Of a DNA stretch of 64,000 nucleotides, positions 9,901 through 35,400 are shown in pieces. The position numbers and the translations under genes are program-made. The stretch's first letter is position 1. The number at the start of each line of letters is the position of its first letter. The notes under the pieces were generated by a model. The model saw only the letters and a program-made list of their open reading frames with translations, did not search any database and was not told the DNA's origin. The DNA is from Asterias rubens (lineage: Eukaryota): assembly GCF_902459465.1 (NCBI RefSeq), contig NC_047079.1, positions 8,370,001 to 8,434,000 of the forward strand, given 5' to 3'.

Positions 9901-12900
9901 AAGTATATATAGTAAAAGTGCCTTGCTCAGGGACACAAGTGTCACGACCGGGACTCGAACCCCGGCACACTGCTAAACAGAAACAACGGAGCTTGAGTCC
10001 GGTGCTCTTATCCGCTCAGCCCAGACACGCTACAAAATGTGTGCTGATTGCTTGATGCACTACCTGAGGTAATTGAACTCTCGGTTGTCAGGGGCGACTT
10101 TGTAAGGGGGTGACTTTGTCAGCGGGCGACTTTGTAAGGGGGTTGTAAAGTTGCCCCCCTTACAAAGTCACCCCTTTACAAAGTTACCCCCTTACAAAGC
10201 CACCCCTTACAAATTCGCCCCCGCTTGCTAACTCGGTTAAAGATTCGGAGGTGATTTCCTGAATTTTGACTCAGTGTGGACAACTCGGTTGGATGACTAC
10301 ATTTTTGTTGTGCAGATCATTAACCTAACTCCAGGTACGGAGAACAACGTGAAGGTTCAGTGTTTTAATGACCACCTTGTATTTGCTTTTTAAGGTCGAT
10401 CTTGTCCCGCCCTCTACCGGCCTACATATGGTATGATATCAGGAGGTAACTTTACCTTTAGAGACTCTGTTCGATTCAGCTGCAATGATGGCTACTATAT
10501 AAATGGCTCCACATCGAGATCATGTCAAGCTGATGGCACCTGGTCTGGTATCCAACCTACCTGTGAAAGTATGTATACTGGGTTTATTAAATGGAATGGT
10601 AATGAAGAAGAAATAGACATGTCTCGAGCCTTGACGAAATTATAAACATTGAAACACTGGAAGGCACTTGATACATTGAGTTCGATTGTCACATTTTTGG
10701 TGTGTCTTCCCAAATCGTTTGGTTGAAATTTTTGAGCCTATAGGTTGATAGCTGGTTTGTTTGATTGGTAAAATATTTCAGCTCTGTTTTTCTCCAAAAT
10801 GATGCCTTATCCTGAACCTGAATACAAATTATCATCTGGTTTTGCTTATGTTTTTGTTTTGGCTGGAATAAACAGCAAAATAATGTCACAACCTCACACC
10901 AATTTGAGGCGATTACTGGTGTGATAATAAACTATGCGATTTGTTTTTTCAGTTGTAAAATGCAACGTCCCACAGCCCATCAGTAACGGTGAGATCTTGT
11001 ACTACTCCGGTAGGAATTTCAGCTACTCCAACTCCATTGGTTTTGTGTGTAACGATTATTATGAAATGGAAGGCATAAGTTGGAGTCAATGTGGAGTGAA
11101 TGGAACATGGACACCAGAGCCACCAGTGTGTTTACCAAGTAAGTTATAATATACGTTGTTTGAGTAGTCCAAAGCCACCAGTGTGTGTACCAAGTAAGTT
11201 ATAATATACGTTGTTTGAGTAGTCCAGAGCCACCAGTGTGTGTACCAAGTAAGTTATAATATACGTTGTTTGAGTAGTCCAAAGCCACCAGTGTGTGTAC
11301 CAAGTAAGTTATAATATACGTTGTTTGAGTAGTCCAGAGCCACCAGTGTGTTTACCAAGTAAGTTATAATATACGTTGTTTGAGTAGTCCAGAGCCACCA
11401 GTGTGTGTACCAAGTAAGTTATAATATACGTTGTTTGAGTAGTCCAGAGCCACCAGTGTGTTTACCAAGTAAGTTATAATAACGTTGTTTGAGTAGTCCA
11501 GAGCCACCAGTGTGTGTACCAAGTAAGTTATAATATACGTTGTTTGAGTAGTCCAGAGCCACCAGTGTGTTTACCAAGTAAGTTATAATTACGTTGTTTG
11601 AGTAGTCCAGAGCCACCAGTGTGTGTACCAAGTAAGTTATAATATACGTTGTTTGAGTAGTCCAGAGCCACCAGTGTGTGTACCAAGTAAGTTATAATAT
11701 ACGTTGTTTGAGTAGTCCAAAGCCACCAGTGTGTTTACCAAGTAAGTTATAATATACGTTGTTTGAGTAGTCCAGAGCCACCAGTGTGTGTACCAAGTAA
11801 GTTATAATATACGTTGTTTGAGTAGTCCAGAGCCACCAGTGTGTGTACCAAGTAAGTTATAATATACGTTGTTTGAGTAGTCCAAAGCCACCAGTGTGTT
11901 TACCAAGTAAGTTATAATATACGTTGTTTGAGTAGTCCAGAGCCACCAGTGTACCAAGTAAGTTATAATATACGTTGTTTGAGTAGTCCAGAGCCACTAG
12001 TGTGTGTACCAAGTAAGTTATAATATACGTTGTTTGAGAATTCCATAGCCACCAGTGTGTGTACCAAGTAAGTTATAATATACGTTGTTTGAGTAGTCCA
12101 AAGCCACCAGTGTGTTTACCAAGTAAGTTATAATATACGTTGTTTGAGTAGTCCAGAGCCACCAGTGTACCAAGTAAGTTATAATATACGTTGTTTGAGT
12201 AGTCCAGAGCCACCAGTGTGTGTACCAAGTAAGTTATCATAATACGTTGTTTGAGTAGTCCAGAGCCACCAGTGTGTGTACCAAGTAAGTTATAATACGT
12301 TGTTTGAGTAGTCCAGAGCCACCAGTGTGTGTACCAAGTAAGTGACGTTGTGGGTAGCATTGTGGACCATCAGCTGTGCGGGTAGGGGCTGAGGGGTTGT
12401 CTGGGGCCCAGCAGTCATGACCGTACTGGATCAGTGCCATTTTGTGCATGGATAGCCCAACATGGATACAGGGGATGTTTAACATAAAAAGAAAACAAAT
12501 TCAAACGTTGTTTAGCGATTGGAAATGAAATGAATGACCGAATACTATTGAAATTACCTGGTGTGGCAACTGTTTGTCTGTTCACAGTATGTGGTGAGAG
12601 TTCTAACGCTCCCAGAGACCCTCTAACTGGACGCATTGTTGGTGGTAGGCAGGCCATACCAGGCTCTTGGCCATGGCAAGTCTTACTCGGTATCAATGCC
12701 CCTAAGTATGACATATTTGGTGACGCTATCTGTGGTGGCTCCATGCTGAATGAAGAATGGATTATGACTGCTGCCCATTGCGTAACGGGAGGATTTGAAG
12801 ATTCGGAAACGTATGGGGAGACTGTTCCTCCATACACCGTGGATGTATCATTGGGACTCCATAGGAGGAGTGTGCCGACTCAGCACACTATCAATGTAAG

Positions 12901-13899
12901 ATGTGTTATTTTGCTTAGCCATAACATTTCGTAAGTTTCTTTCTTGTGCTTCCTTTTTGTTTGGAAATCTTAAACAAAGAGCAGGCTTTTCTTTACAAGA
13001 ACATTTTCCTTCAAGAAGTTTCTCACTTTCCTCGTATTTATAGTCAAATTGAATACCAAAATTATTATAACATGTTCTGTCTTTAACTTTCCATATTTTA
13101 TACTTGTTTAACCTGCATGACAGAGAACCGTTCGTGAAATCATCAAACACCCTAATTATGACCCTTCGACGTTTGACTCCGATGTGGCATTGATACATCT
13201 CAATGAATCCATCAAATTCACTGACTTCATTCGACCAATCTGTCTCCCACCACAAAGCACCCACTTTAAGGAGGATGACGACGAACGCGTGTACATCCCT
13301 AACGTAGCCGACGAGGATATAACGGCGGTTGTGATTGGCTGGGGGAAGATCTCAGAACATGGACGGACCTCTGATACGCTTCGAGAGGTGCACGTTGGTG
13401 TCGATGTGTCACGAGTTGAATGTAACGTGAGGCAACATCTTGATGTCACGCGTAACATGGTATGTGCGGGATCAAGAGAAGGTAAGTCACGCTTCTTTTG
13501 ACTGGCATACCAAAAATAATGTAATACCAGTTTTTCCAAGTTCCTCAAAAGAGTCTTTGGTTTTTGTAACCCCAAATAATATTTTTCGCCATCGAAAACG
13601 TTTTGACGGAGATAGCAAACAGAATTTATGTCTCTCACCGGGCGAACAGGCCAAAAATCAAAACTGCTCAATTAACCATCGTTGATACTATTTTGTTTTT
13701 ACTACCAGGTGGGCGTGACGCTTGTAGAGGCGATAGTGGGGGTCCGTTGATGCTACAAGACGACGTCACCAATCGCTATTTTACATACGGAGTGGTATCA
13801 TGGGGTGATGGATGTGGACGTGAAGGCAACTTTGGCGTTTATGTGCGGATCGAAAACTTTGTAGATTGGATACAATCTAAAATAAGGTTGGAGCGTTAA
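6992..13899 (+). CDS. MASP-like: MASP/C1r/C1s-like serine protease A (SP-CUB1-EGF-CUB2-CCP1-CCP2-trypsin), 11 coding exons, 708 aa
   Basis: Exons 6992-7011, 7460-7700, 7859-8033, 8569-8691, 9052-9245, 9538-9694, 10395-10568, 10953-11138, 12588-12895, 13124-13481, 13709-13899; total 2127 nt, open. Signal [27 protein letters not shown]; CUB1 [13 protein letters not shown]; cbEGF DVNEC; activation site TGR|IVGG; triad TAAHC / DSDVAL / GDSGGP; S1 Asp (RDAC). Confidence 0.93.
9830..10030 (-). mobile_element. tRNA-headed SINE with a CORE-like motif
   Basis: The minus strand reads ggttcgagtcccggt (B box) then gtgtccctgagcaaggcactt, resembling the MIR/CORE consensus as I recall it. Confidence 0.55.
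10091..10223. repeat. Fold-back of 18-19-bp units in gene A intron 6
   Basis: Three ggggtgactttgtaaggg-like units followed by about four reverse-complement cccttacaaagtcacccc-like units. Confidence 0.85.
11114..12343 (+). repeat. 55-bp minisatellite built from the end of gene A exon 8 plus its 5' splice donor, 23 donor copies
   Basis: Unit ccagagccaccagtgtgtgtaccaa|gtaagttataatatacgttgtttgagtagt; counted GTAAGT from 11139 to 12338. Confidence 0.97.
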
Positions 13900-13944
13900 A
13901 CCAACGGAGTAGTGCCGACTAAAGTGGAGAAAAAACTGTTTAAC

Positions 13945-15719: not shown

Positions 15720-18700
15720 ATGGCTCAAACACTGAATCGGTAAGTTTTGTCACGCAGAACTTCTTCTTATACAGTGGTTCTCTTAACTAGTAGTAGCAGA
15801 TTGCGTGTTTTTAAAACATTATTTGTAATTATGTCTACATTTGTGGTGACAAAAATGGTTAATGGTCGTTTTGAATCAGAATAATGTTAAAGGTAGTTTC
15901 ATAGATTGGAAAATACTAACACAAAATACGATGTCGGTCACTTCAAATCCAAGTGACTTCGTACCCAAAATATCTTACCCAAGTACCCAAGTCACTTCAT
16001 ACACAAGTAACCTCGTACCCCAGTCACTTCGTACCCGAGTCACTTCTGTTTTTAAACCCAAAGTTGAATACATGTGATTTTCATAAGGACGCGTGTCATC
16101 ATCGCTTCAATATTGATGTACCTCGTCCATTTTCCTGTCAACACAACATGCGAAACTGAGCAACGAAGCGCCCTCTACGGGCAGATAGAGTCACCAGACT
16201 ATCCTGAGCCGTATGGTGATAACGTAGATAGAGTCTGGAACATAACCGTGCCTGACGGATTCACAATAGTCTTGTACTTCAGTCTCTTCGAGCTAGAAGC
16301 TTCATTAGATTGTGCATATGACTATGTCAAGGTAATTTTTACGAAGTAAAGTATGGCCTGCCGTGATTCATACTTAACTCAAAAATAGCTGTTAAGCGTA
16401 CATAGCAAGTTTAAAATTTAAAGCTCTCACAATTTCAGCGAGAATAAAAGAAACACTATAAATTGCTACTTATTTATTTTCTAACTTGCAGCTCAGGAGT
16501 TTTAAAAATGCTGTTTGAAATAAATACAGAATTGTTTATTCTTCGGATATTTTAAACTCCTGGTTTGCCTCTAGATGTGCTACACATTTTTAACACAAGT
16601 TCCTGTCGACAGGTGTCAAGTTCCAAAGAGACAGCAACCTTCTGTGGCAATGGTCAGTTCTTGGAGTTTAGAACCCCACGTGACAGGAACATGACGTCAC
16701 CAAATAACAACATGGTGGTCGAGTTTCATTCGGACTATTCCAATGAAGAACAGTTCTCTGGATTTGTTGCACATTACCAAGCCAGGGGTACGTCATCACA
16801 ACAATAACAAACACCAAAAACCACGAGCTGACACAATCCAATGTAATGTAATGAAATCTAATTTGAATTGTGCAAATCTGCTTGCTCTGATCCGAAAGAC
16901 AATGAATGTGCTCAAACAGTCGACCAAATGAAAGAACCAGACCTTGTTTGGGGGTTACCAAAGAGCCTATTATTATAAAACAACCCACACAAAATAAATA
17001 CAACAAATGACATAATTCGTATCTGTCAATGATAGTTATTATTGAATTTTACGGATACACAATCCAGTATCTTAAATTCATTATGAATGACGTCATCAAT
17101 CCGCTACTTAGAGGTATACTGACACTGAAACAATGCAGACGCACAGATTTATGTGCGCGGCGGGCAGGGTGAGCCAATGAACGACCTCCTATTGACTTCT
17201 AGCTGAGGGCGCCACACTCAAATGACGTCATGTGTACACCGTTTAAATTGGGTCCTTTTTTAACGATCATTCGTTTATTATGTTTTTGGTTTGAGTCAAA
17301 CATGTTGCTTAGTAAACATACATAGAAACATATACATTTTAAATAAATAGTGTCTGCACGTCCACTACAATAGTAAGTTCTGTCCGTTTTTTTCTCTCAA
17401 AGTTGATGTCAAACTAATTTCTCCTATTCAGATGTCAATGAGTGTTTGGTAAACAATGGCGGGTGTGAGCAAGTTTGTCATAACTTCGTGTCTGGATATT
17501 ACTGTTCATGTCGACTGTATTACCAGCTGCAGCCAGATAATCACCACTGCAAAGGTAACACTTTTCTTCCTCATTTTATTGGGAACTAGCGACACCGACA
17601 ACATTCATTTTTGTTCGTCTTTGCAAGTCGAACAAGACACATGGGTTTTATCCGTTGACATTGGTCGACGCGGTGCCACTTTTTTTATATGTTTTTTTAA
17701 ATTAATTGTTTTATTATTTATTTTTTATTTTTATGTATGAAAGAAATAGAAGCGACGCTACTTTTAGGGGGGGGGGGGGGGGGGGCTTATAAGGGTCCGG
17801 CGACCTTTTTGTGATTTTCTTTTCATTGTTTCTTCAACAAATTTCGAAAGTTTTTCTACTTTTTCAATAATCAAAAATATTGGTTTGTAGATATTTCAAG
17901 GGAAGATGAATGTCTCGCTAAAACATTATGACTTGAGTGGACAGGATCTAGCCTACCACTAATCGGTTTCAGGTCGTACTACATAATGTCCTCTACATAC
18001 CGGTTCATCTCTTTCTTACCTCCTCTTTCATTAGAACCTAGTATCGAAACACTTTTCTCAGTACTTTTTTGTGTATTTCAGTTTCTTGCAGGGATATTGT
18101 TTATACCTCAGATGAAGATGACTTCCAGACTCCTGACTATCCTGACGATTATCCGCCGAATGCTGATTGTAACTGGCTGATAAATGTCGACATCGGATAC
18201 TCCATTAACATCGTGTTTGAAACATTCCAGATAGAATCGCATCCAACTATACTCTGTCCTTACGACTATGTCAAAGTAGGCGTAAACAGTGATTAAGAGT
18301 TACACCAAATAAACTAGTTGATTTACCTTTCAAAGTAACATTTTTTTAGTAACAGAAAGTTGGAGGAGAGTCATAACTATCAACATCCTACTGTGTTTTA
18401 TGTTGATGCATTAAGTAAGAACCAGGAATAATGTACTTGATATATCCTGAATAAAACTACTTATCAGGTGACGAGTTGTATAATGGGACATGTATTATTA
18501 TTAAAAGCTGTTGCCTTTTTGCACTTTGGCACATGGCTTAGAGATCGGTAACAAAATAAACTACAACATTGGTGCCCAATGACTTCAAGTACAGAACAAA
18601 GTCTGTCGTGTATATTTAAGTTGACATTGAGCCAGTGTAAACATCATCTAATGCCAAAACTTGTTTCCTTTTCTTGGCAGATTTATTACGATAACGAGGT

Positions 18701-21700
18701 TAGAGGGCCAATGTGTGGCGATTCACAAACTGATCTACCCGCAAGTTTCTCCACATCCGGGAACATTGCCAATGTGACGTTTCATTCCGATCAATCAGTA
18801 CAGAGAATGGGATTCCGGGCTCGGTATGACGTCACAGGTGAGAATAACAACCTTGTTGTCAGGTTCGGTCGGCCTAAGCGCATTGCCTTGATTGACCTGG
18901 GGTCGAGCGAGGTTGTCTGGGTGTTGCATGCTAGTCAGACGCCACCGTGGCCTATCGTTCGTATTAAGCGATAGATAAATAGTGTTCGATAAATACCACC
19001 GCGTCATTTCTAGTACTCAACAGACCCTGCTTAATTCGAAATAGTCCGTCCCCTCAAAACTCTTTCCTCGTTACGCAAAACAAAACGAAACTACCAATGA
19101 ACGAATATGGGCGGCAAAGTAAAGGGCAACGGAAAATGTTGGTATATTTCACTGCCATTCATCCGTGCAACATGTTCCCACTAAAACATGTCGTTCTTAT
19201 TTACAATCGTCCACTCCAAAATTGGCACATTAACGTTTTAATAAGGCAATGTCTTTTGCGGGTACAATAATGATCGGACGTTCAAACTTGGTGAATGTTT
19301 TACACGGATACCTAGCATCAAGTGATAAACCAAAAGGTAAACTGACTGGTTTGTATAAAATCAAACGGTTATAAACACTCACAAAGATACTTCCTTTCGA
19401 GTCTTGTCACTTTGAATGCCTCTCGTTTATTGGTTGTAGGTCGATCTTGTCCCGCCCTCTACCGGCCTACATATGGTATGATATCAGGAAGTAACTTTAC
19501 CTTTAGAGACTCTGTTCGATTCAGCTGCAATGATGGCTACGTTATAAATGGCTCCACATCGAGATCATGTCAAGCTAATGGCACCTGGTCTGGTATCCAA
19601 CCTACCTGTGAAAGTATGTATGCATCTATTAACTGAGTTTACAGTTTATACAAAAAAAATGAACAATTAAAACAAATGTATTTCAATTATATGCTCGTTC
19701 CTCAAAATATCCGCTCGTTTCCGAGAAATCCTTTCGTCCTATTCCCAAAAATCTCACGAAAAAACGAATGTTATTTGAAACGAGGTTTAAGTTTACACAA
19801 AAGGTTAGGTAATGACAATGCCTGCATCGCATCATTCCCTCAGCCATAGGTCAAAATGTTTTAGTGACGACTAAAATGGAAGGGCTTTGATACAAGTGAC
19901 TCAAACTTCATTTCTCTGAGAAAGAATTAACATCAAGATGTGATGATTCAAGAAGGTTCAACGGAGTATTAATATGCGATTTGTTTTTTCAGTTGTAAAA
20001 TGCAACATCCCACAGCCCATCAGTAACGGTGAGATCAAGTACTACTCCGGTATGAATTTCAGCTACTCCAATTCCATTGGTTTTGTGTGTAACGATTATT
20101 ATGAAATGGAAGGCATGAGTTCGAGTGAATGTGGAGTGAATGGAACATGGACACCAGAGCCACCAGTGTGTGTACCAAGTAAGTTATAATATACGTTGTT
20201 TGAGTAGTCCAGAGCCACCAGTGTGTGTACCAAGTAAGTTATAATATACGTTGTTTGAGTAGTCCAGAGCCACCAGTGTGTGTACCAAGTAAGTTAGAAT
20301 ATACGTTGTTTGAGTAGTCCAAAGCCACCAGTGTGTGTACCAAGTAAGTTATAATATACGTTGTTTGAGTAGTCCAGAGCCACCAGTGTGTGTACCAAGT
20401 AAGTTATAATATACGTTGTTTGAGTAGTCCAGAGCCACCAGTGTGTTTACCAAGTAAGTTATAATATACGTTGTTTGAGTAGTCCAGAGCCACCAGTGTG
20501 TGTACCAAGTAAGTTATAATATACGTTGTTTGAGTAGTCCAGAGCCACCAGTGTGTGTACCAAGTAAGTTATAATATACGTTGTTTGAGTAGTCCAGAGC
20601 CACCAGTGTGTGTACCAAGTAAGTTATAATATACGTTGTTTGAGTAGTCCAGAGCCACCAGTGTGTGTACCAAGTAAGTTAGAATATACGTTGTTTGAGT
20701 AGTCCAGAGCCACCAGTGTGTGTACCAAGTAAGTTATAATATACGTTGTTTGAGTAGTCCAAAGCCACCAGTGTGTGCACCAAGTAATTTATAATATACG
20801 TTGTTTGAGTAGTCCAGAGCCACCAGTGTGTGTACCAAGTAAGTTATAATAATACGTTGTTTGAGTAGTCCAACGCCACCAGTGTGTGTACCAAGTAAGT
20901 TATAATATACGTTGTTTGAGTAGTCCAAAGTCACCAGTGTGTGTACCAAGTAAGTTATAATATACGTTGTTTGAGTAGTCCAAAGCCACCAGTGTACCAA
21001 GTAAGTTATAATATACGTTGTTTGAGTAGTCCAGAGCCACCAGTGTGTGTACCAAGTAAGTTATAATATACGTTGTTTGAGTAGTCCAACGCCACCAGTG
21101 TACCAAGTAAGTTATATACGTCGTTTTAGTAGTACAACCTGAGCGAATAGCGTCATTGCCGTCATCTCTGTGTTGGTGTCTGAGACAACAGAGTACAGTA
21201 TTTGAAGAAAAAGTATCAAGTCAGAGGAAGTGGAAACTATGGCAATTGAACAAAGGCAATGACACAAAACTTCTGCCTGCCAGCCTGCCTGCCAGTCTGC
21301 CTGCCTGCCTGCCAGTCGGCCTGTCTGCCTGCCTGCCTGCCAGTCTGCCTGCCTGCCTGCCTGCCAGTCTGCCAGTCTGCCAGTCTGCCTGCCAGTCTGC
21401 CTGCCTGCCTGCCAGTCTGCCTGCCAGTCTTCATGTCTGTCTGCCGCCCGCTGCTGTCTGTATGCTTGCCTGCTAGTCTACATGCCATGCATGTCTACCA
21501 ATCTGCCAGCCTGCGGGGGTTGGGTGGGGCGTTCTTTGTTTTTCATTCAAGTTGATTTTTCTAAATTTACTTTATTCTACCTTTTTCAAATTTCAAAAGC
21601 GTATTGTGAATGTTCTTCTGCTGTATCACTTTCATTAATTAAAAAAAAATCAACATGATGAGTAGGATTTGAAACTTTGCATGGTGGAAATACGATATAG

Positions 21701-23787
21701 AAAGGTTTTGCGGTAACACCATTTAATGACTATCTCTAATGAGTTGGGGTGGTTCTGAAAAGAACCGTTGGTTTTAACTCGACGTTTCGATCAATATGCT
21801 CTGATCGTCTTCTGGAGAAAGCTTTCCCCAACTCATTAGAGATAGTCATTACATGGTGTTTCCGCAAAACCTTTCTATTTCAACATGATAGTTAATATTT
21901 TTGTATATCCCCAACTCATTAGAGATAGTCATTACATGGTGTTTCCGCAAAACCTTTCTATTTCAACATGATAGTTAATATTTTTGTATATCCCCAACTC
22001 ATTAGAGATAGTCATTACATGGTGTTTCCGCAAAACCTTTCTATTTCAACATGATAGTTAATATTTTTGTATATCAACATTTAAAGGAGTATTTTCAGGT
22101 CTGAGCGTGCGGAAACTTAAAAAAAGTTAAGGACCAATGGAATTATTTCGTCTTGTTCTTGTTGTCTGTTCAGTATGTGGTGAGAGTTCTATTATACCAA
22201 GAGGCCTTTCGACTGGACGCATTGTCGGTGGTCAAGAGTCTACACCGGGCTCATGGCCGTGGCAAGTACTGATCAATATCAACGCCCCTGGGTTTGGACT
22301 AAGAAACGTCATCTGCGGTGGCTCCGTGTTGAATGAAGAATGGATATTGACTGCAGCCCATTGCCTCACTGCAACCAAAAGCTACCTTACAACGTATGGC
22401 GAAGTTGTACCCAACCACACCGTGGTTGTATCATTGGGGATTCATAAGAGAGGCAGTCCGGCTGAACACACTATCGTCGTAAGTTAAGACCATTTTTGTT
22501 TTACTGTGCACTTTCCTGTAACAAAGACGTAAATGTCGGTCACAAAAAGGCCACAAAGACGTAAATGTAGGTCACAAAGACCAAAATGTCTCCAAAAACG
22601 TAAACGTAAGTCATTGCCACATGTTGTTTTTACCTGTTCAGCTTAAATCAACAACAGCATTGCTTAATAAGCGTTGGCCTATTTGAAATTCAAATTCGCA
22701 ACTTGGGTTTAGGTAACATCTCAGCTTATATATACATGTATGCAAAAAAAAAAAAACATGATAGTTTCTCTGTGACAATCGCCAACCACGTTCCAGGCGT
22801 ATTGTCGTGTGTGTGACAACTTTTGTTTCGTCATTAACTTCTGCAGTATAACATTTCTTCCTGACATGACAGAGATCTGCATTTGAAATCATCAAGCATG
22901 CTGAGTTTTACCCTGTAACCTACGATAACGATGTGGCGTTAATTCACCTCAATGAATCCATCCGATTCAATAACGTCATACGACCAATCTGTCTCCCACC
23001 ACAAAACACACACATTGAGCAGGATGACGACGAACGCGTGTACATCCCTAACGTAGCCGACGAGGATACAACGGCGGTTGTGATTGGCTGGGGGCAGAGG
23101 GGCCAGGGCCTGTCTACGTCAAACGTACTGCTAGAGGTTTACGTTGGTGTCAATGTGCCGAGGGACCTATGTAATATGAAGCTAAATGATCCTGTTACAA
23201 CTAACATGGTTTGCGCTGGATCAACAGAAGGTGAGTTATGTCATACGTTATGTATCTCCAATATGCCAATTACTTCCCATAACAATCCATAACGACTCGG
23301 TTTCTTAGACCAAAGACGATCCCTAGTCAAACAGTAAGAAAGAGTACAACAACACAATGAGATTATACGAGTAGGATCAAGTTTGACGCAGCCAAGCGTA
23401 AATGCAAGAATAGTGATAGGGGTCGAAATTGGAAAGAAAACTCATGGGTGAACAATAAATTAAATAAACAAAGGAGGGGTGGAGCTGGGACTGTTTTGGC
23501 CTTTTACAAATGCGACAGTTTATGATACCGCTCTTTTTCTCAAAATATCTATTTCTTTGCGTCACTTTTGTTCAACCTATGTTTTATTTTATGTAGGTGG
23601 TCTTGACAGTTGTCAGGGGGACAGCGGGGGACCGTTGATGCTACGAGATGACGTCACTAATCGCTATTTTACATATGGAATAGTATCTTGGGGCGAGGGA
23701 TGCGCAAAAGCAGGCAAGTTTGGTGTGTATGTGCGCATCGAGAACTTCGTGGATTGGATCCAATATGAGACATTTGTGGAGCGTTGA
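15720..23787 (+). CDS. MASP-like: MASP/C1r/C1s-like serine protease B, 11 coding exons, 708 aa
   Basis: Exons 15720-15739, 16088-16331, 16613-16787, 17432-17554, 18082-18275, 18681-18837, 19440-19613, 19993-20178, 22174-22478, 22873-23230, 23597-23787; 2127 nt, open. TGR|[26 protein letters not shown]. Confidence 0.93.
20154..21120 (+). repeat. Same 55-bp exon-end/donor minisatellite in gene B, 18 copies
   Basis: Donors counted from 20179 to 21107; one copy reads gtaatt. Confidence 0.97.
21262..21475 (+). repeat. Degenerate (CTGC)n/ctgccagt microsatellite in gene B intron 8
   Basis: Visible 4-bp periodicity. Confidence 0.9.
21697..22075. mobile_element. Penelope-like pseudo-LTR remnant (inverted copy plus three ~83-bp tandem tails)
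   Basis: 21700-21750 is the reverse complement of the unit repeated from 21826; degenerate hammerhead core CAGAAGA...GAAACGTC on the minus strand. Confidence 0.6.
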
Positions 23788-25355: not shown

Positions 25356-28300
25356 ATGGGTGACACGCTGCAAAGGTAAGTATTAAACAAAAGCTTAGTA
25401 CAATGTTTTTTACTGGCATAAGCATGTTCTGTAGTTACAAGGTACCAAACACTTGCCGTTTAGAAATACTAGTAATTGTAAAGACATAATCAGCATGATT
25501 GATGAGTCTACAAGTTCCTCATGTTGATCAGTCAATTTAACGGATAAGCTGTAGTCACGTGGTAATCTTGTTTTGAAAATGCATTGCCAGTGTTAAAACC
25601 AGAAAATTTCTACCAATTGTGAGAGAATTTAAGGGGTTCTTTACATGTAAAGAGTTATAGGATTTAAAATAACGCACAGCGACACAAACATGGTCACTAG
25701 GTTATTTTAGGTCATGTTTTGTGGTTTAACCACCCATTGCCACAACTATACCTCACTGATAATATAATTATTTTTTATTTCAATGTTAAATTTGGATCAC
25801 ATAAGGAGCTGCAAGAGCTGATTTTACATTTTCAGTCTTCTCATTTTAAAAATCACAAATCCGTTTCCAAACTTAACCCAAGTAATTGATCTTATTTCTA
25901 AAAGGTTGCCTTTCGTTTCTTTGATATGGATAAGCCTCCTTTATTTGTCCGGAAAAACGACGTCAGAAACAGTGCTTCGAAGCGCCCTCTTCGGGCAGAT
26001 AGAGTCACCAGACTATCCCGAGCCCTATAGTGATAATGTACACCGAGTCTGGAACATAAGTGTGCCTGGGGGATTCACCCTAGACTTGTACTTCAGTCTC
26101 TTCCAGCTGGAACCCTCAAATAATTGTGAATATGATTATGTCAAGGTAACGTTTCTGCTACAAAATTAGAATAAAAACTGCGTTGTTCCTTAATTAGATC
26201 ACTAATAGTGTTATTTTGAACTCTTCGTAAAACAAACATGTAACATACTAGTGGGTTGTCCCCAAGGTATCAAGTTTGCAGGAGGCGGCAACCTTCTGTG
26301 GAAACGACCTGGTGTTGGAGAAAAGAACCCCACAAGACAGGCACATGACGTCACCAAACAGCAACATGGTGGTCGAGTTTCATTCAGACTTCTCAAATGG
26401 TGAACCTTTTCTTGGATTCGTTGCACATTACCAAGCTACAGGTACGTCAACAAAACAGCCGAAACAACTTAATCAATTAGGAACTACAACCTAGTGCTTT
26501 CCTTACACATCGCATTGATGACTACTAATAATTATTAAAGAATACTTAAAGACTCGTCTAAATGCGCTTTACATTACAAATGAGTGAAGTTAATTTTTAA
26601 TTAAGTGAATCGATTTTTTTTGTCTCATTGTTAGGATTTAATTTTGTTGTGTTTTGTTTTATACAGTGAAGTATTAATACAGTTTGGGTCAATGAGTTTA
26701 TGATATTTAATATACATATATATTTTTTTGCGACATCTTTCCTCGGTATGGCTTCTTCAGATGTCAATGAGTGTTTGGTAAACAATGGCGGGTGTGAGCA
26801 AGTGTGTCATAACTTCGAATCTGGATATTACTGTTCATGTCGACTGTATTACCAGCTACAGCCAGATAATCACCACTGCAAAGGTAATCTAAAACATCTG
26901 TAATTATTCCTTTCAGATCATGAATGCAAGACCCACAATAGTTGTATGTGATTATAATAAATTTAGTTACACTTACCCATTTCTGCGTCTAGGTGGGGAA
27001 ATTAGCCTCGTGTTGGTATGGCGCTAGTCCGTTGTCTTCCATCCACATAATTGATTTTTCACAATATATATATTTCAACTATTGATGTTTAATGCCTACG
27101 AGATATTACCTCAAATACTATGGTGTCCTCTAGCTGAAAGGTTGCTGGTCTAGGAGTGGTGTACGGCCAGTTCAGTTCCCATTCAGCCTTTGGACGACTA
27201 TAGTTATGCATTTTTACAATGCCGGGTTTAGGAGTCCATTGTTACCGTTTACAGGTGACATTCCCAGCATGGTCACACAAAAGAGGAAAGGCATATCTCT
27301 GAATGCAATCACTAAATGCGCTTGGTAGCTGTTACTGGAATTTCACTACTAACTGTTGTCATTATTACATCCCGATGTATGAACTTTAAGGATTATAAAG
27401 TTTTGGGGCCGGGTACTTCTTTCAAGAGGAAAAAGTACGGTGTCGCGAATTCCTAATAAAATGCGGCAATATTTCGTAGCGTTCTATTTTGTCAGGCCTA
27501 GTTCGGATACCCTATACTAGGGAGCGGTTTAATTATATAACAGATTAACAACATGGTCAACTAACAACTTATTCGGTTCTTTCGAAATAATGGTTCCATT
27601 CTTTCGAAACAACGTGTCATCCCCTGTCAGGTAGTTTCTAAACTTAAAGACAAAAAAGAGTTACCGCAACTATTCTAGTATGTTTTGTGCGAGTATTTAC
27701 TTCTTATTCTTTGTGTAATTCAGTTTCTTGCAGGGATATTGTTTATACCTCAGATGAAGATGAGTTCCAGACTCCTGACTATCCTGACGATTATCCGCCG
27801 AATGCTGATTGTAACTGGCTGATAAATGTCGACATCGGATACTCCATCAACATTGTGTTTTATACATTCCAGATAGAATCACATCCAACTGTACTCTGTC
27901 CTTACGACTATGTCAAGGTTCGTGTCAACAAATAAAAACACAAACTAATAAAGTTGGCCGAAACACAAACGAAGGACGCCTTATCTAAACATTAGCAAAT
28001 GGAAGAATCTTGTCAATAATAATTGATAATTCTGTTATTATTTGTTTAAGATTGTTTATGACAATGAGGTTAGAGGGCCACTCTGCGGCGAGTTGCCAAC
28101 TGATCTACCGTTAAGTATCACTACAATTGGGAACGTAGCCAATGTGACGTTTCATTCTGATGACTCGGAACAGCGAATGGGATTCCGTGCCCGGTATTAC
28201 GTCACAGGTCAGTATATCTCATCATCATATCTGTTGGTTTGATCTTTTGTTCTATCTATCCACACCATTGCTGGGTCAATGGTGACCCGGATCAAGGGTC

Positions 28301-31298
28301 AATGTTGACTCGGAATATGGTTCAATGTTGACCCGGATTATGGGTCATTGCTGATCCGGAATATAGGTCAATAATATGGTCAATGCTAACCCGGATCAAC
28401 GGTCAATGCTGACTCGGAGTATGGGTCAATATGATCAATGCTGACCCGGGATATGAGTCAATGCTGACTATACAGTTTTTAAAACTTATGTTTGGTAAGG
28501 TTTTGACCCAAACAATCTTACTTTCAACGAACCCCTTCAACTTAACCATTGTGCCTCTTGTTTATTGTTGCTGCAGGGCGATCTTGTTCACCACTACACC
28601 CTCCTACATATGGCTGGATATCAGGAAGTAACTTTACCATTCGATACACTGTAACATTCAGCTGTATGGATGGTTATTATATTCAAGGATCCAGGTCAAG
28701 GTCATGTAAATCAGATGGTTCATGGTCTGGTGTCCAACCTGTCTGTAATAGTAAGTAACGGGCTTTGGTTCCCGATACGTTTAAACGTGTTAAACGATCT
28801 TGATCATTGGAGATATAAGCAACACACAAACACACGAGTGCGTGGGTTTCAATCAGACAACTATGAGAATTGTGCGATTTTTAGTAAAAGTTTAATTTTT
28901 GTCTGAAAACTGATTAACCGTTAGTAGTGAAATGTGTAACTAACCCGACCTTGCAGATTATGCATCATTCACTGTGTACCTGAAATAGCTTCCACTCTGC
29001 ATCAAATACATCACCGTATTTTAAGATTTTAAATGTAAAAGTTGAAGACGTTGTCATATGATGCTATTTTGTATGTAAATACTATTGCGTTCATTGTTCG
29101 ATACATCACCCGAAGATCGACCCATTTTTATTTCTTTCCGTTGTTCATTTTTATCCAGTGGTAACTTGTGACGTCCCACAGCCCATCAGTAACGGTGAGA
29201 TCTTGTACTACTCCGGTAGGAATTTCAGCTACTCCAACTCCATTGGTTTTGTGTGTAACGATTATTATGAAATAGACGGACCGAGTTCGAGTCAATGTGG
29301 TATACACGGAACATGGACGCCGGAGCCGCCAGTGTGTGAACCAAGTAAGTTGATTTGTGTATTACTGGTAAAGAAAACGGATGTCACTTTATCAAAAGAA
29401 TGTCAAATCCGGTTTTGTTTGTTTGTACTTTGTTACTAGTGTTTGTGCAACATAATATGCTGTGCTTTGTGTCTTCATTTTAAAATTCTTCACATAAATG
29501 ATGATAAGAAGAAGAAGAAAACTTAACATGTGCCGGTATCTATCTTAAGTGAAGCTAATAGAGTAGAAAGAGAACTACACTTAAAACATGCCGGGACGAT
29601 GAGAACACTTAACATGTGCCGGTATCTATCACAAGTGAAGCTAATAGAGCAAGAAAGGGAACTACACTTAAAACATACCGGGACGATGACAACGGTTTAA
29701 CATACAGTATTTCATGCAAGATGTTGAACTACGTTTGAATTATGAGACCTAATCATTTTTAGCACCACAGTGTTGTGGTGCAATTTGCTTCCAATCAAAC
29801 CATGATCACCGTGGCAATTATTTTACGTGCGTTACCTAACACACGGGACCAACGGCTTTACGCCCCATCCGAAGGACGAAGCATCGTGGTGAAGTGACTG
29901 ATTCTGGTAACCTTTTCTGTATACAGTATGTGGTGAGAGTTCTATTCCTCCACGGAACCATCCTAACGGTGGACGTATTACCGGTGGTCGTGAGGCTACA
30001 CCAGGCTCATGGCCATGGCAAGTACTCCTTATGATCAACGCCCCTCGGTATGACATCTTTGATAACTCCATCTGTGGTGGCTCTGTTCTGAATGAGGAAT
30101 GGATTATGACTGCTGCTCACTGTGTCACAGGGAGCTACGAAGAAAGACCAAGATTCTACGGCCATGAAATACCCATAGATACCGTGGACATAGCACTGGG
30201 ACTTCACAAGAGAACAATGCCCACTGAAAACACTATTGTTGTAAGTTGCAGTTGTAATTAACAAAGTGATTGAACGTTCGCCATTTTGGAACCTCCATTT
30301 AAAAAAAAAAAATTGTGAAAACTTGATCAGAAGCTCCCTCTTGAATTGTTTATCTATGTTTGTCATTACAGAGATCTTGAATTGTTTATCTATGTTTGTC
30401 ATTACAGAGATCTTGAATTGTTTATCTATGTTTGTCATTACAGAGATCTTGAATTGTTTATCTATGTTTGTCATTACAGAGATCTTGAATTGTTTATATA
30501 TGTTTGTCTTTACAGAGATCTTGAATTGTTTATCTATGTTTGTCATTACAGAGATCTGTTCGTGAAATCATCAAGCATCCAAACTTTGATCGTTCAACCT
30601 ACGAGTCCGATATAGCATTAATTCATCTCAATGAATCCATCCAATTCAATGACGTCATACGACCAATCTGTCTCCCACCACAAAGCACACACTTTAAGGT
30701 GGATGACGACGAACGCGTTTACATCCCTAACGTAGCCGACGAGGATACAACGGCGGTTGTGATTGGCTGGGGACGGCTGGATCTGAACAGACCGACCTCT
30801 AATGTGTTGCGAGAGGTACACGTCGGTGTTGATGTACCGCGGGTATTATGTAACGCGAAACTACCTCAAACTGTGACTCGTAACATGGTTTGCGCAGGAC
30901 CCAGAGAAGGTAGGCTATGTGAAGCTTTAGGAATTTTCTTTTCAGAGTTGTTAAATTTTGCATCGGGGATAATAAAATTAATTAATATTTAATTTACCCT
31001 AAACACCAATGTGTGTTAGCACATCACCCGCTGTATCAACCATTGCAATGTTTATCTTTGTATAAAACTAGTTGGTAATTTTGCACTTTTTGTTGTTTTA
31101 TTATTAGGTGGGCGTGACGCTTGTAAGGGAGATAGTGGGGGCCCATTAATGCTTCGAGATGCTACTACCAATCGCTACTTTTCATATGGAATGGTATCGT
31201 GGGGAGACGGATGCGCAAATGAAGGCAAGTTTGGTGTGTATGTGCGCATGGAGAACTTTGTGAATTGGATCCAATCACAGATCGTTGTTGAGCGTTAA
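25356..31298 (+). CDS. MASP-like: MASP/C1r/C1s-like serine protease C, 11 coding exons, 710 aa
   Basis: Exons 25356-25375, 25905-26145, 26267-26441, 26761-26883, 27724-27917, 28051-28207, 28577-28750, 29159-29344, 29927-30240, 30552-30909, 31108-31298; 2133 nt, open. GGR|[26 protein letters not shown]. Confidence 0.93.
28270..28468 (+). repeat. Degenerate ~20-bp tandem repeat in gene C intron 6
   Basis: Recurring ggtcaatg(c/t)tgac(c/t)cgga. Confidence 0.8.
29521..29690 (+). repeat. ~86-bp imperfect duplication in gene C intron 8
   Basis: acttaacatgtgccggtatctatc... at 29521 and 29607. Confidence 0.8.
30341..30556 (+). repeat. 36-bp minisatellite built from the 3' splice acceptor of gene C exon 10, 6 copies
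   Basis: Unit ttgaattgtttatctatgtttgtcattacag|agatc starting at 30341, 30377, 30413, 30449, 30485, 30521. The last unit runs into the exon. Confidence 0.97.
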
Positions 31299-31630: not shown

Positions 31631-31890
31631 AAGTAGTATGATGATGCAAGATGTAATATAAGTACTATAACACATTCTAAAGTAAGTAGTATGATGATGC
31701 GAGATGTAATAGAAGTACTATAACACATTCTAAGTAAGTAGTATGATGATGCGAGATGTAATAGAAGTACTATAACACATTCTAAGTAAGTAGTATGATG
31801 ATGCGAGATGTAATAGAAGTACTATAACACATTCTAAGTAAGTAGTATGATGATGCGAGATGTAATATAAGTACTATAACACATTCTAAA
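31631..31890 (+). repeat. 52-bp tandem repeat (about 5 copies) between the 3' ends of genes C and D
   Basis: Unit aagtagtatgatgatgcgagatgtaatagaagtactataacacattctaagt. Confidence 0.92.
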
Positions 31891-32482
31891 GTACATCACA
31901 TTGTAAACGGAAAGAAATTGTGAGTTTAACACATAATTGGTCGTTCACTATTTCGTACACTGTTTTGGTTACTATAAAAGTGCCGTTACATAAAGCTTAC
32001 ATAATGTTTACTTTGTCTTACAATAAATGAACATGAATTATCATTATAAACCAATGATTTGGCTCTTAGTGTTATGTTGATGATTTGTTCCGTGCATATA
32101 AACGGATCCTCTTAATTAAGAGCCTCAAAACAAAGCCGAAATGAAGATTAAGGCACTGAACACCTTTGTTAATCATTTTTTGACAAAGTCAACAATTCTC
32201 ATGTGGTGTATCTCAGCATTACATGGATAAAATAACAAATTGGAACTAAGAAATTTGGCAAGCATTCTTGTTGCACATTTAATTTGTGTGCAATCAGCTG
32301 AATATATTAGAGTGAGATATTATTACCTCTTTACTTCAGAGGGAGCAGTTGTTTACAATGTTTTATTTTATCAACAGCTCTCCATTGCTAATTACCAAGT
32401 AAGGTTTTATGCTAACAATTATTTCGAGTTGTTCCCAATAGTGTCCAGATTTAAGAACGTGTTTCCATGAGTGGACGTCCGA

Positions 32483-35400
32483 TTAAATTTGAGTGACCTC
32501 CCGAATCCAGTCAGCAAAGTTGCCCACTCTGCTATAGACCCCGTATTTACCTTGCTGTGCACAATTACCTTCTCCCCATGATGTTATACCGTAGGCATAG
32601 TATCTCTCGTTGGAAGCCTTCAACATTAAAGGACCTCCACTGTCTCCGTAACACGTATCACGACCTCCTGAGAAAGGGTTATAAATACGTCAATATTAAT
32701 GTTCAATAGCCTCACTCAAGGTCGATCTTTTAGACATGAGCCCGATTTCTTGCTCCATTCACTGCGGACTTTGGTGCAATACGGACACTCTTAACATTGA
32801 GCACCAAGTTACTGTGCTACATACCACATAAGCAAAGTATTTCTCTTTTATCTCACAAATGCGTTTTCGTTTACCAAGGTGTGTGCTGTTCATGTAGCCT
32901 TAGCGCCGGTTTTCGTATCCTCGACCAACAGTTGTGGAAAATACTTTGTTCGTCAAAAATGGTCAAAAGACTTGACATAATATGCTTTTGCAGTGATAAA
33001 TGAAAGACGTTTATCAGAGCCCGTTTAACTTACCATCTGCAAGTCCCGCGCACAACATGTCCACTGTCACCGGACTATGCATGGCGTCGTTACACGTCTC
33101 AAGATTAACAAGAGGAAGATAAACTTGTTGCAACGTCTCTGATCTTGATGTCCTGCTAGTTGTACCTAGTTAAGTGGCAACAAAAACGAATCATCACAGT
33201 CTTGTTTAACCGTCGAAACGACTAAACATTGGGTAAGGTTATTTTATAGCGTTTATATACCAATGATGTTTACAAAATTAACCCCGTTGTAGTTATTATG
33301 ACCCATGTGATAAACATCTTGGTAGAGATCGCAATTATTTAAACCATAATCGCTTATTGGTATCCTGCGCATTTGCATTGAAAAGCAGCAGAAGTCGCCG
33401 GTTTGAAACGGCCGTTTAAGAACTCGTCATCCACTCACTTATTCCCTTAATTCACAATGGGAAATGATTGTACCGAATTAAGGTAAGGTCCAAAACTTAC
33501 CCCATCCAACTGCAATAGCTTCGGTGTCTTCAAGGGTAACAAACTCTGAATATTCATCATCACTGAATGTTTCATCATCCGGGATACAAAGTGGTCGGAT
33601 TTGTCTGGTCAAGACAACTGGGCTGTCCAGAAGCAATAAGGCAACGTCACCGTCATACAGAGCTGTGTCGTAAGAGGGCGCTCTGAAGACTTCGATAACT
33701 CCTCTCTGTTAGTTGGAGCAAAGTTTCGTCAGGCCTTTCACATTATTATTTTTCCAAAATCAAGATAAATTAAAATGATAAAACTGTCGTTCGTGTGGTG
33801 TTCATTGTCTATAGGTAGGAAGACCTTTTCGAAACGAATTGTTGTTTGGTTTTGATTGTGTTAATCTATTTCTAGAAACCCATTTCAAGATTATAGACCT
33901 TATCGCAAATACTAGGTACGCGCACGTTAACGTTAGGCGCTGATTGCGGTGCATGCTGGTCTAGCTTGCGATCAAAGTTGATCCATAGCTAGACCAGCAT
34001 GCACCTCATGCAACAGTTATAGCTTATGCAATGGGCATTTGCGAGAAGGTCTATGCACTGGTATCGGTTTGTGAAAACAATGTGACAATAAATCTTTATC
34101 ATGGTGCGGCCATCTTGATTTTCTCCCATTCAAATCAGTGTAACCAAACTGAGGCCGGAAGGAGAATTAGTCTGGTTCCTTTTTATACAACAACAATTAG
34201 CACACATTACTTTTGTTGGATCAGGGAACATGACCAAGATGGTAGCAGCGTGATAAAGGTCTATACAACTTTAACTCACCTCAATGTTGTTTCCATTAAA
34301 CGCATGAATCCCAAGTGAGATAGTTATCGAGTCCGCTGGTAACTTCTGTCCATAAAGTCCTTTTAGTTTGATCTTTCTTGCCGTGACGCAATGAGCAGCA
34401 GTCAGTACCCAGTTCTCACTAATCAGAGATCCACCACACAGATTATTCACTCTAAAGGTTTTGGATCTAGCTTCTATCTTCACAACCCATGGCCAAGAGC
34501 CCTCTCGTGCCTCTGTACCGCCAATGATGCGTGATTTAGGACGGGAGTCATGAGGTGTAATGCTGCTTTTCCCACATACTATAACAAAGTATTATGTCAA
34601 TTTGAGATATTATTGATTTGGAAAATTATTGATATTTATTTCATTTATCAGGAAAGATACAGCAATGAGCAATTCAAACACATAGGAAAGAAAAAGAAAC
34701 AGCTGGAGCTCGAAGGATTGCCTACAAGAAACTCAATTCCTGTCTAGAGGCTAGGCTCTCCTCTCGAGCTGTTAAAATGTAGTCATTTTGATATAGAGTC
34801 AAACTACCTACTTGGGATACATTTTGGTTCCTCTCCGGACCACGTCCCGTCACTTTGGCAAACTCTGACGACCTCGAGGCTGTTCAGTTCATAAAAGGAG
34901 TCACAAGAATAGCTTGCCGAGGAGTCATAAATTGGTGGATCTTGACTCATTGTTATCCTCCCGCGGTTGACTCTGGGTTGCAGACGAGGGCACCCGACCA
35001 CTTAAGACGACAGTAAAAAGTATTAACTCAATTCAACACATTATTTTTATACAGAGTGAGTCAAAAAGAAGTTGCTCGGGATTGGTGATTTTTTGTTTGT
35101 CAGAACAAACAAATGACACTCTAAGTAAAGCATGATTATGTTCACTACGAAATCTTTCTGCTTATTAGATAAAAAAGAATGAAAGACATTGATCATTCCT
35201 CAGAGGATTTATGTCTATTTTAATAAGTGTGCTCATTTTGCAAGCTTTCCACCAAAAAGAACAACAGTTTAGCTGTACATGGCGAGTCAAACTGAAGTTG
35301 ACCAAGATTTATGACTTAAGAACGGAATCGTATAGTAATTGTAATAAATCTGCATGGTTATAATACGCATTTAATCGTATCACTATGAACTAAATTGGGT

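What the first reader, a model, noticed from the sequence alone, without database searches (positions are those of the whole stretch)
12588..34578. Hybrid of the two MASP lineages: AGY serine, histidine loop and split protease exons
Seen: the active-site Ser codon is AGT (A), AGC (B), AGT (C), AGT (D). All four have the Cys42-Cys58 histidine loop (CGGS...TAAHC), and the SP domain is split over 3 exons (A-C) or 4 (D). Known: vertebrate MASP-1 has a TCN codon, histidine loop and split exons, while MASP-2/MASP-3/C1r/C1s have AGY, no loop and a single exon. Inference: this combination fits neither class. It could represent an ancestral or intermediate state, or an independently recruited protease domain, and bears on the retroposition model for the AGY lineage. 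Partial hybrids may already be described in invertebrate chordates.
Basis: partly seen in the sequence, partly recalled or inferred. Interest (0 to 1): 0.75.

Follow-up and report, generated by a model that had tools for sequence, protein, structure and literature searches.

The report
Sea-star MASP genes with mixed markers
Four neighbouring sea-star genes for complement-activating proteases (MASP-like) mix sequence hallmarks that separate two protease lineages in vertebrates, but every sea-star relative examined shows the same mix, so it is an old shared state and not a peculiarity of this locus.

Summary
The window, from an Asterias-type sea star, holds four intact CUB-EGF-CUB-CCP-CCP-protease genes: A, B and C on the + strand and D on the - strand. 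All four have an AGY active-site serine codon and the Cys42/Cys58 "histidine loop" cysteines. The protease domain is split into 3 exons in A-C and 4 in D. Spliced transcript contigs confirm the exon borders of D and part of C. A RefSeq Asterias rubens protein maps exactly onto C.

The combination fits neither vertebrate class, but it is not special to this locus. I mapped protein to genome in two other sea stars, a congener (Asterias amurensis), a brittle star, a feather star and two acorn worms. All show AGY, the loop and the same two protease introns. The sea anemone MASP has TCN, the loop and different introns. Only the last intron matches a vertebrate MASP-1 intron. A protease-only tree cannot say whether this AGY state is homologous to the chordate MASP-2/-3 lineage (AU p 0.077) or arose independently. 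AGY is also the majority codon among this genome's CxGDSGGP proteases (11 of 13).

The genes are already annotated as MASP1-like. I found no paper that types these markers in echinoderms or hemichordates.

The parts
7476..13899 (+). Gene A, MASP-like: CUB1, EGF, CUB2, CCP1 and CCP2 exons (7476-11139), then SP exons 12588-12895, 13124-13481 and 13709-13899. The signal-peptide exon was not located.
   Evidence: ORFs, colinear tblastn to sea-star MASP-like proteins, splice model
16074..23787 (+). Gene B, MASP-like: heavy-chain exons 16074-20179, then SP exons 22174-22478, 22873-23230 and 23597-23787.
   Evidence: 82-97% identical per exon to Asterias amurensis P0363
25906..31298 (+). Gene C, MASP-like: heavy-chain exons 25906-29344, then SP exons 29927-30240, 30552-30909 and 31108-31298. 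The 3' UTR runs to about 31678.
   Evidence: Pfam per exon gives CUB, EGF_CA, CUB, Sushi, Sushi, Trypsin; RefSeq A. rubens P0350 maps exactly; RNA contigs
32483..39913 (-). Gene D, MASP-like (second asteroid subfamily): SP exons 34578-34280, 33705-33501, 33165-33034 and 32667-32483; heavy-chain exons 34813-39913. A short first coding exon lies further upstream, within 52598-53106.
   Evidence: spliced contigs in 4 runs; orthologue P0162 at 73-100% identity per exon; first exon placed by blastn
13735..13737 (+). Ser195 codon AGT of gene A
23623..23625 (+). Ser195 codon AGC of gene B
31134..31136 (+). Ser195 codon AGT of gene C
32639..32641 (-). Ser195 codon AGT of gene D
12731..12781 (+). Histidine-loop region of A: Cys42 codon 12731-12733, His57-Cys58 in TAAHC ending at 12781. 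Equivalent regions: B 22314-22364, C 30073-30123, D 34438-34388 (minus).
12896..13123 (+). SP intron alpha of A: phase 0, before R-x-V-x-E-I-I, about chymotrypsin residues 82/83. Same position in B (22479-22872), C (30241-30551) and D (33706-34279, minus).
   Evidence: same position and phase in Ptychodera, Glandiceps, Acanthaster, Patiria, A. amurensis and Amphiura; same position in Anneissia, where the acceptor is not a canonical AG and the phase was not confirmed
13482..13708 (+). SP intron beta of A: phase 1 in the Gly codon before GRDAC (about Gly187). Same position in B (23231-23596), C (30910-31107) and D (32668-33033, minus).
   Evidence: shared with all ambulacrarian MASPs mapped and with the last intron of the deer MASP-1 SP
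33166..33500 (-). SP intron gamma: D-type only, phase 1 in Gly142 of GWG.
   Evidence: also in the Acanthaster and A. amurensis D-type genes

Best explanation
The window holds the complete MASP-like gene set of an Asterias-type sea star: three tandem paralogues (A-C) and one convergent, more divergent gene (D).

What the genes encode. Each encodes a secreted modular zymogen, CUB1-EGF(Ca)-CUB2-CCP1-CCP2-trypsin-like protease. By analogy with MASPs, the CUB-EGF-CUB part would bind collagen-stalked recognition lectins. The protease would be activated by cleavage at Arg|Ile and stay tethered by the linker Cys to Cys122. With Asp189 it would cut after Arg/Lys, most plausibly in C3/factor-B-like substrates. 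The architecture, catalytic residues, activation site and transcription are shown here. Partners and substrates are inferred.

What the marker mix means. AGY + histidine loop + split SP exons is the shared, inherited state of ambulacrarian (echinoderm + hemichordate) MASPs. The loop and the last SP intron are old features kept from the ancestral MASP; they are also seen in cnidarian and vertebrate MASP-1. The phase-0 intron alpha and an acidic insert before GWG are ambulacrarian traits. The TCN-to-AGY switch was fixed before crinoids, asterozoans and enteropneusts diverged. I judge it more likely an independent switch than the root of the chordate MASP-2/-3/C1r/C1s lineage. These are therefore ordinary MASP-family members. 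The vertebrate three-marker dichotomy simply does not hold outside chordates.
For: Architecture: Pfam per exon for C. Colinear matches of A-D to annotated sea-star MASP1-like proteins. Best PDB matches are the MASP-1/3 CUB1-EGF-CUB2 and CCP1-CCP2-SP fragments, ahead of MASP-2, C1s and C1r.
Intactness: open frames, His57/Asp102/Ser195, R|I(V/I/T)GG and Asp189 are all present.
Expression and exon borders.
Clade-wide markers by exact protein-to-genome mapping: Ptychodera AGT, Glandiceps AGC, Anneissia AGC, Amphiura AGT, Acanthaster AGC, Patiria AGT, A. amurensis AGT. All have the loop and introns alpha and beta. Nematostella has TCC, the loop and different introns. The deer MASP-1 SP has TCT, and only its last intron coincides with beta; the deer MASP-3 SP is AGC, single exon, no loop.
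Synteny: the order sulfatase / A-C type / D type with a nested GPCR / EMP24 / ankyrin is conserved in three other sea stars, so the cluster is old.
Genome context: the only genes with the full MASP architecture in this genome are these four. Among this genome's CxGDSGGP proteases AGY outnumbers TCN 11 to 2.
Tree: Ambulacraria forms one clade (88/96), separate from the starred MASP-2+MASP-3 clade. There is an ambulacrarian-specific insert and no indel shared with MASP-2/-3.
Against: The SP tree backbone is unresolved. A single AGY clade is not formally rejected (AU p 0.077), so a common origin of ambulacrarian and chordate AGY remains possible. Amphioxus, ascidian, lamprey, C1r and C1s sequences could not be retrieved, so the sampling lacks the taxa that matter most. 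The outgroups are unnamed proteases on long branches. No biochemical evidence exists for lectin binding or C3 cleavage by these proteins. The exon borders of A and B have no RNA support here.
Confidence: 0.8

Rival explanations
1. True intermediate. An AGY, loop-bearing, intron-containing MASP already existed in the deuterostome ancestor. Ambulacraria kept only this copy. In chordates a processed copy of it was retroposed behind the CCP2 exon of the TCN gene, giving the MASP-3-type exon and later MASP-2/C1r/C1s, and then lost the loop.
For: AGY is shared by all ambulacrarian MASPs and by the chordate MASP-2/-3 lineage. A TCN-to-AGY switch needs two substitutions or a non-serine intermediate, which is Brenner's argument as cited in bioRxiv 10.1101/2022.06.02.494303. 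The AU test does not reject an all-AGY clade at 0.05 (p 0.077). Reviews place the first AGY MASP in cephalochordates (PMC8359198), so an earlier origin is compatible with the known distribution.
Against: The ML tree does not join Ambulacraria to MASP-2+MASP-3, and forcing the join costs 4.6 lnL. No shared indel or other derived character was seen. SP identity to MASP-1, -2, -3 and the cnidarian MASP is equally low, 29-37%. AGY is the common codon among other S1 proteases of this genome, so the marker recurs readily.
Confidence: 0.17
2. Independently recruited protease domain. An ambulacrarian ancestor replaced the original MASP protease domain, by exon shuffling, with one from an unrelated AGY-type S1 protease.
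For: By sequence, the SP domain is no closer to other MASP SPs than to unrelated S1 proteases (34-41% to an unnamed outgroup protease against 29-37% to MASPs). In an SP-only database search, the top hits after the ambulacrarian MASPs are polyserase, factor-C-like and ovochymase proteins.
Against: The CCP2|SP boundary (phase-1 intron, P|[IV]CG linker, R|I activation site) is the same as in Nematostella, hemichordate and vertebrate MASPs. Intron beta is shared with vertebrate MASP-1. The other AGY protease genes of this genome that matched the query run uninterrupted across the beta position. In the rooted tree all MASP SPs fall on one side of the four outgroups, though only weakly (76/88).
Confidence: 0.03

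Closest known systems
Vertebrate MASP-1 (protease part of the MASP1 gene)
   Same: Same six-domain architecture. Histidine-loop cysteines, split SP exons, and the last SP intron at the identical position and phase (E|GGRDAC). R|I activation site and Asp189. The heavy chain gives the best PDB matches.
   Different: Ser195 is TCT in the deer locus, against AGY here. MASP-1 has five internal SP introns, four of them at other positions. There is no alternative MASP-3-type exon in the sea-star genes. SP identity is only 30-34%.
Vertebrate MASP-3 / MASP-2 (AGY lineage, with C1r and C1s)
   Same: AGY codon at Ser195 (MASP-3 verified in the deer locus) and the same domain architecture.
   Different: These lack Cys42/Cys58 (they read ...TAAHV). 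The MASP-3 SP is encoded by one exon; single-exon SPs in MASP-2, C1r and C1s were not checked here. In the SP tree they form their own starred clade, which does not include the sea-star genes.
Hemichordate, crinoid, ophiuroid and other asteroid 'mannan-binding lectin serine protease 1-like' genes (RefSeq models)
   Same: Same architecture, AGY, loop, introns alpha and beta, and acidic insert before GWG. One SP clade. Gene C is itself a RefSeq A. rubens model.
   Different: Lineage-specific introns: gamma in D-type asteroid genes, an extra phase-2 intron in Amphiura, and loss of the CCP1/CCP2/SP boundary introns in Anneissia. Copy number also differs.
Nematostella vectensis MASP (cnidarian)
   Same: Same architecture, histidine loop, split SP exons, and a phase-1 CCP2|SP junction.
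   Different: Ser195 is TCC. Its two internal SP introns lie at other positions (T|AAHC phase 1; CLPETD|DQ phase 2). Ser214 is AGC, against TCN here.
Oyster CgMASPL-1 (PMC8605247)
   Same: Described as AGY-type and as having the histidine-loop cysteines, so a partial 'hybrid' is already in print.
   Different: It has four CUB and three LDLa domains and no CCP modules, so it is not the classical MASP architecture. Its introns are not discussed.

Membership tests
MASP/C1r/C1s family | Domain order CUB1-EGF-CUB2-CCP1-CCP2-serine protease | tested here: met
   Pfam on gene C exons gives CUB, EGF_CA/FXa_inhibition, CUB, Sushi, Sushi, Trypsin. A, B and D are colinear with annotated sea-star MASP1-like proteins.
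MASP/C1r/C1s family | Zymogen with an Arg-Ile activation site, a linker Cys, and the catalytic triad His57/Asp102/Ser195 | tested here: met
   R|IVGG (A, B), R|ITGG (C), R|IIGG (D). TAAHC, D(V/I)AL and GDSGGP are present in all four. The linker reads CGESS or CGKSS and the Cys122 context reads PICLP or PLCIP.
MASP/C1r/C1s family | Ca2+-dependent binding to collagen stalks of MBL, ficolin or C1q through CUB1-EGF-CUB2 | not testable with these tools
   Only sequence hints: an EGF_CA match and the DVNEC motif (ORFs). The best PDB matches are MASP-1/3 CUB1-EGF-CUB2.
MASP/C1r/C1s family | Cleavage of complement substrates (C3, C4, C2, pro-factor D) | not testable with these tools
   Asp189 predicts Arg/Lys specificity. 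No substrate data exist.
TCN (MASP-1) lineage | Ser195 encoded by TCN | tested here: not met
   AGT, AGC, AGT, AGT
TCN (MASP-1) lineage | Histidine-loop cysteines Cys42 and Cys58 | tested here: met
   CGGS...TAAHC in all four genes
TCN (MASP-1) lineage | SP domain split by introns at the MASP-1 positions | tested here: inconclusive
   The SP domain is split, but only 1 of the 5 internal deer MASP-1 SP introns (the last, phase 1 before GRDAC) coincides.
AGY (MASP-2/MASP-3/C1r/C1s) lineage | Ser195 encoded by AGY | tested here: met
AGY (MASP-2/MASP-3/C1r/C1s) lineage | No histidine loop | tested here: not met
   Both cysteines are present. MASP-2 and MASP-3 proteins lack them.
AGY (MASP-2/MASP-3/C1r/C1s) lineage | SP domain encoded by a single exon | tested here: not met
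   3 or 4 exons, confirmed by RNA contigs and a RefSeq model
AGY (MASP-2/MASP-3/C1r/C1s) lineage | SP groups phylogenetically with MASP-2/MASP-3 | tested here: inconclusive
   Not joined in the ML tree. The constrained tree is 4.6 lnL worse, AU p 0.077.

The most novel reading that the evidence does not exclude
The ambulacrarian AGY / histidine-loop / intron-bearing MASP is the surviving, unprocessed form of the gene whose retroposed copy became the chordate MASP-3-type exon and, through it, MASP-2, C1r and C1s. In that case the order of events in the AGY lineage would be codon switch first, then intron loss by retroposition, then loop loss.
Probability: 0.17. Interest if true: 0.6.

Novelty: new member of a known kind. 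Interest (0 to 1): 0.35.

Why it matters
The TCN/AGY, histidine-loop and exon-structure triad has been used since the late 1990s to split the MASP/C1r/C1s family into two lineages. Published reviews date the AGY lineage to cephalochordates (PMC8359198, PMC6015906). This work shows that all echinoderm and hemichordate MASPs examined carry AGY together with the 'MASP-1-type' loop and introns. Two readings follow. Either the AGY codon is older than chordates, which would give the retroposition model a concrete intron-bearing parent. Or the marker is homoplastic and should not be used alone to assign invertebrate MASPs to 'MASP-1' or 'MASP-3' orthology, as has been done for the oyster protein. The point is modest and of interest to specialists. 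The genes themselves are ordinary, already annotated members of the family.

Tried and rejected
- Kimura et al. 2009 (Nematostella MASP) is not held in the library, so I mapped the Nematostella gene myself.
- Literature searches for MASP with AGY, TCN, histidine loop or echinoderm found no typing of ambulacrarian MASPs.
- A vertebrate MASP-1 locus was hard to obtain. The Stegostoma gene is too long and the Mus caroli isoform is not on record. A deer read-through model that contains both SP domains worked.
- Amphioxus, ascidian, lamprey, C1r and C1s sequences did not appear in either homologue search. Vertebrate MASP1 clusters filled the list and polyserases. They were also absent from the 150 nearest representatives, so they are missing from the tree.
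- My first junction finder, based on tblastn HSPs, failed on several junctions. I replaced it with an exact block-chaining mapper.
- The crinoid alpha junction has no canonical AG acceptor in the assembly. Its position is clear but its phase is unconfirmed.
- AU tests of four backbone groupings all gave p > 0.05, so none can be used.
- A pseudogene or annotation artefact is rejected by the open frames, the spliced contigs and the RefSeq mapping.
- No complex prediction or structure prediction was run, because neither would bear on the marker question.
Full report
**What is there**

The window is C19:8370001-8434000 of a 417.6-Mb assembly. The window carries four genes with the full MASP architecture.

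ORF lists and six-frame motif scans show CUB1, EGF, CUB2, CCP1, CCP2 and trypsin-like exons for:
- A (7476-13899, + strand)
- B (16074-23787, + strand)
- C (25906-31298, + strand)
- D (32483-39913, - strand, with a further short first exon near 52.6-53.1 kb)

Pfam on the single exons of C gives CUB, EGF_CA, CUB, Sushi, Sushi, Trypsin. The RefSeq Asterias rubens protein 'mannan-binding lectin serine protease 1-like' (P0350) maps at 100% onto gene C. D is 73-100% identical per exon to an Asterias amurensis protein of the same name. The window is therefore Asterias rubens or something indistinguishable from it, and the genes are already annotated. A six-frame search of the whole genome with the D orthologue finds heavy-chain matches only in this cluster, so these four genes are the species' full MASP-like complement.

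**Checking the observation**

- The Ser195 codons are AGT, AGC, AGT and AGT for A to D.
- All four genes have CGGS...TAAHC, the Cys42 and Cys58 of the histidine loop.
- With canonical GT-AG sites the protease (SP) domain of A-C assembles from three exons, and that of D from four, into uninterrupted frames.
- These frames carry an R|I activation site, His57, Asp102, Ser195 and Asp189.
- The intron before the first SP exon is phase 1 (P|ICG...).
- Intron alpha is phase 0 and lies before R-x-V-x-E-I-I, at about chymotrypsin residues 82/83.
- Intron beta is phase 1 and lies in the Gly codon before GRDAC, at about Gly187.
- D has an extra phase-1 intron, gamma, in Gly142 of GWG.

The exon borders have independent support. 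Spliced contigs from four public runs of three closely related organisms show all three D joints and C's beta joint, and end at C exon 1's borders. The RefSeq model has identical borders for C. A's and B's borders rest on homology and splice consensus alone.

**Are the 'known' classes as stated?**

I mapped a deer MASP1 read-through model onto its locus.
- The MASP-3 SP is one exon, with AGC and TAAHV (no loop).
- The MASP-1 SP has TCT, the loop and five internal introns.
- MASP-2 proteins also lack the loop cysteines.

**Is the combination special to this locus?**

No. I wrote an exact protein-to-genome mapper and applied it to annotated MASP1-like genes fetched with their DNA.

| Species (group) | Ser195 codon |
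|---|---|
| Ptychodera flava (hemichordate) | AGT |
| Glandiceps talaboti (hemichordate) | AGC |
| Anneissia japonica (crinoid) | AGC |
| Amphiura filiformis (brittle star) | AGT |
| Acanthaster planci (sea star) | AGC |
| Patiria miniata (sea star) | AGT |
| Asterias amurensis (sea star) | AGT |

All seven have the loop cysteines and both introns alpha and beta at the same positions. In six the phases also match those of the window's genes. In Anneissia the alpha junction lacks a canonical acceptor, so its phase is unconfirmed.

Lineage-specific differences are minor:
- Gamma occurs in the D-type genes of Acanthaster and A. amurensis.
- Amphiura has one extra phase-2 intron.
- The crinoid has lost the introns between CCP1, CCP2 and the first SP exon.

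Nematostella is different. It has TCC, the loop, and two SP introns at other positions. Of the deer MASP-1 introns only the last coincides with beta.

The cluster's synteny is conserved in A. amurensis, Acanthaster and Patiria. The order is sulfatase, A-C type genes, then the convergent D type with a GPCR nested in its first intron, then EMP24 and ankyrin.

The triad is thus the ancestral state of Ambulacraria.

**Intermediate state or independent switch?**

I built an SP-only maximum-likelihood tree of 39 sequences under LG+C20. It recovers vertebrate MASP-1, Cnidaria and MASP-2+MASP-3 as starred clades, and Ambulacraria as a clade at 88/96. The branches joining them are weak. AU tests gave:

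| Constrained grouping | lnL cost | AU p |
|---|---|---|
| All AGY sequences together | 4.6 | 0.077 |
| Ambulacraria + MASP-1 | 5.4 | 0.076 |
| Ambulacraria + Cnidaria | 3.3 | 0.24 |

None is rejected. Other points:
- SP identity of A-D to MASP-1, -2, -3 and the cnidarian MASP is uniformly 29-37%.
- The alignment shows an ambulacrarian-specific acidic insert before GWG but no indel shared with MASP-2/-3.
- In this genome the exact motif CxGDSGGP is encoded with AGY 11 times (4 of them here) and with TCN twice. AGY is therefore not a rare state among the animal's S1 proteases.
- From general knowledge, not tested here: Ser195 codon type varies across S1 subfamilies (Krem and Di Cera 2001), and an intron just upstream of the Ser195 exon is common in trypsin-like genes.

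On balance I favour an independent TCN-to-AGY change in the ambulacrarian stem. The 'AGY first, then retroposition and loop loss' scenario stays open at roughly one in six.

A wholesale swap of the protease domain is unlikely. The CCP2|SP junction and intron beta are shared with other MASPs. The other AGY protease genes of this genome that matched the query run uninterrupted across the beta position.

**Function**

From the architecture, the catalytic residues, the activation site and the best solved relatives (MASP-1/3 CUB1-EGF-CUB2 and CCP1-CCP2-SP), the genes most likely encode lectin-pathway-type zymogens with Arg/Lys specificity. D is represented by spliced contigs of about 2.1-2.4 kb in all four runs. 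C is represented by shorter contigs. Binding partners and substrates are inferred, not shown.

**Literature**

A 2024 survey already lists echinoderm MASPs with the classical domain set (PMC11312191). An oyster MASP-like protein has been called AGY-type with a histidine loop (PMC8605247). Reviews date AGY MASPs to cephalochordates (PMC8359198; PMC6015906). I found no paper that types the Ser codon, loop and introns of echinoderm or hemichordate MASPs. Subscription journals are largely outside the library.

**Verdict**

The genes are ordinary and already annotated. The marker mix is a clade-wide ambulacrarian state of modest evolutionary interest. Its bearing on the retroposition model remains untested for lack of amphioxus, ascidian, lamprey and C1r/C1s sequences.

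Noticed in passing
window 11114-12343 and 20154-21116: There is a 55-bp tandem array of 22.6 copies in gene A and 17.6 copies in gene B. Its unit starts in the last ~25 nt of the CCP2 exon and includes the 5' splice donor (..CCAAG|GTAAGT..), so the donor is repeated about 20 times in the CCP2-SP intron. C and D have one donor. The unit length is not a multiple of three and contains TAA, so only the first donor would keep the frame.
   Followed up: partly
window 30266-30565: A tandem repeat lies in SP intron alpha of gene C, directly upstream of the acceptor used at 30552. The RefSeq model uses 30552. No laid contig spanned this junction.
   Followed up: no
window 49032-50030 (+): An intronless 332-aa 7TM receptor ORF is nested, on the opposite strand, in the ~12.7-kb first intron of gene D. 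The same nesting is annotated in Asterias amurensis and Acanthaster planci.
   Followed up: partly
window 42154-42687 and 51278-52193: Reverse-transcriptase-like ORF fragments (retroelement remains) lie upstream of D's second exon, in the large first intron.
   Followed up: no
window 21272-21445 and 21825-22075: A (CTGC)n-rich 20/52-bp repeat and three perfect 83-bp copies lie inside B's CCP2-SP intron.
   Followed up: no
L003 (Anneissia japonica) 4439-5111: The crinoid MASP-like gene encodes CCP1, CCP2 and the first SP exon in one uninterrupted block (residues 293-516). The module-boundary introns present in all other species have been lost. Its alpha junction has no canonical AG in the assembly.
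   Followed up: partly
L001 (Nematostella) and all deuterostome loci: The Ser214 codon (S of SWG) is AGC in Nematostella MASP but TCN in every ambulacrarian MASP and in deer MASP-1 and MASP-3. For Nematostella and the ambulacrarians this is the reverse of the Ser195 pattern.
   Followed up: partly
one search hit list (no locus): An SP-domain search returned classical-architecture MASP1-like proteins from crinoids, sea stars, a brittle star and acorn worms. From sea cucumbers it returned only ovochymase and TMPRSS9-like proteins, and from sea urchins nothing. This may mean loss of MASP in Echinozoa, but a blank there proves nothing.
   Followed up: no
G000:C2:10014036-10014761: An intronless 279-aa open frame encodes a complete trypsin-like domain with an AGT Ser195 codon, 38% identical to D's SP. 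It may be a retroposed or single-exon protease gene.
   Followed up: no
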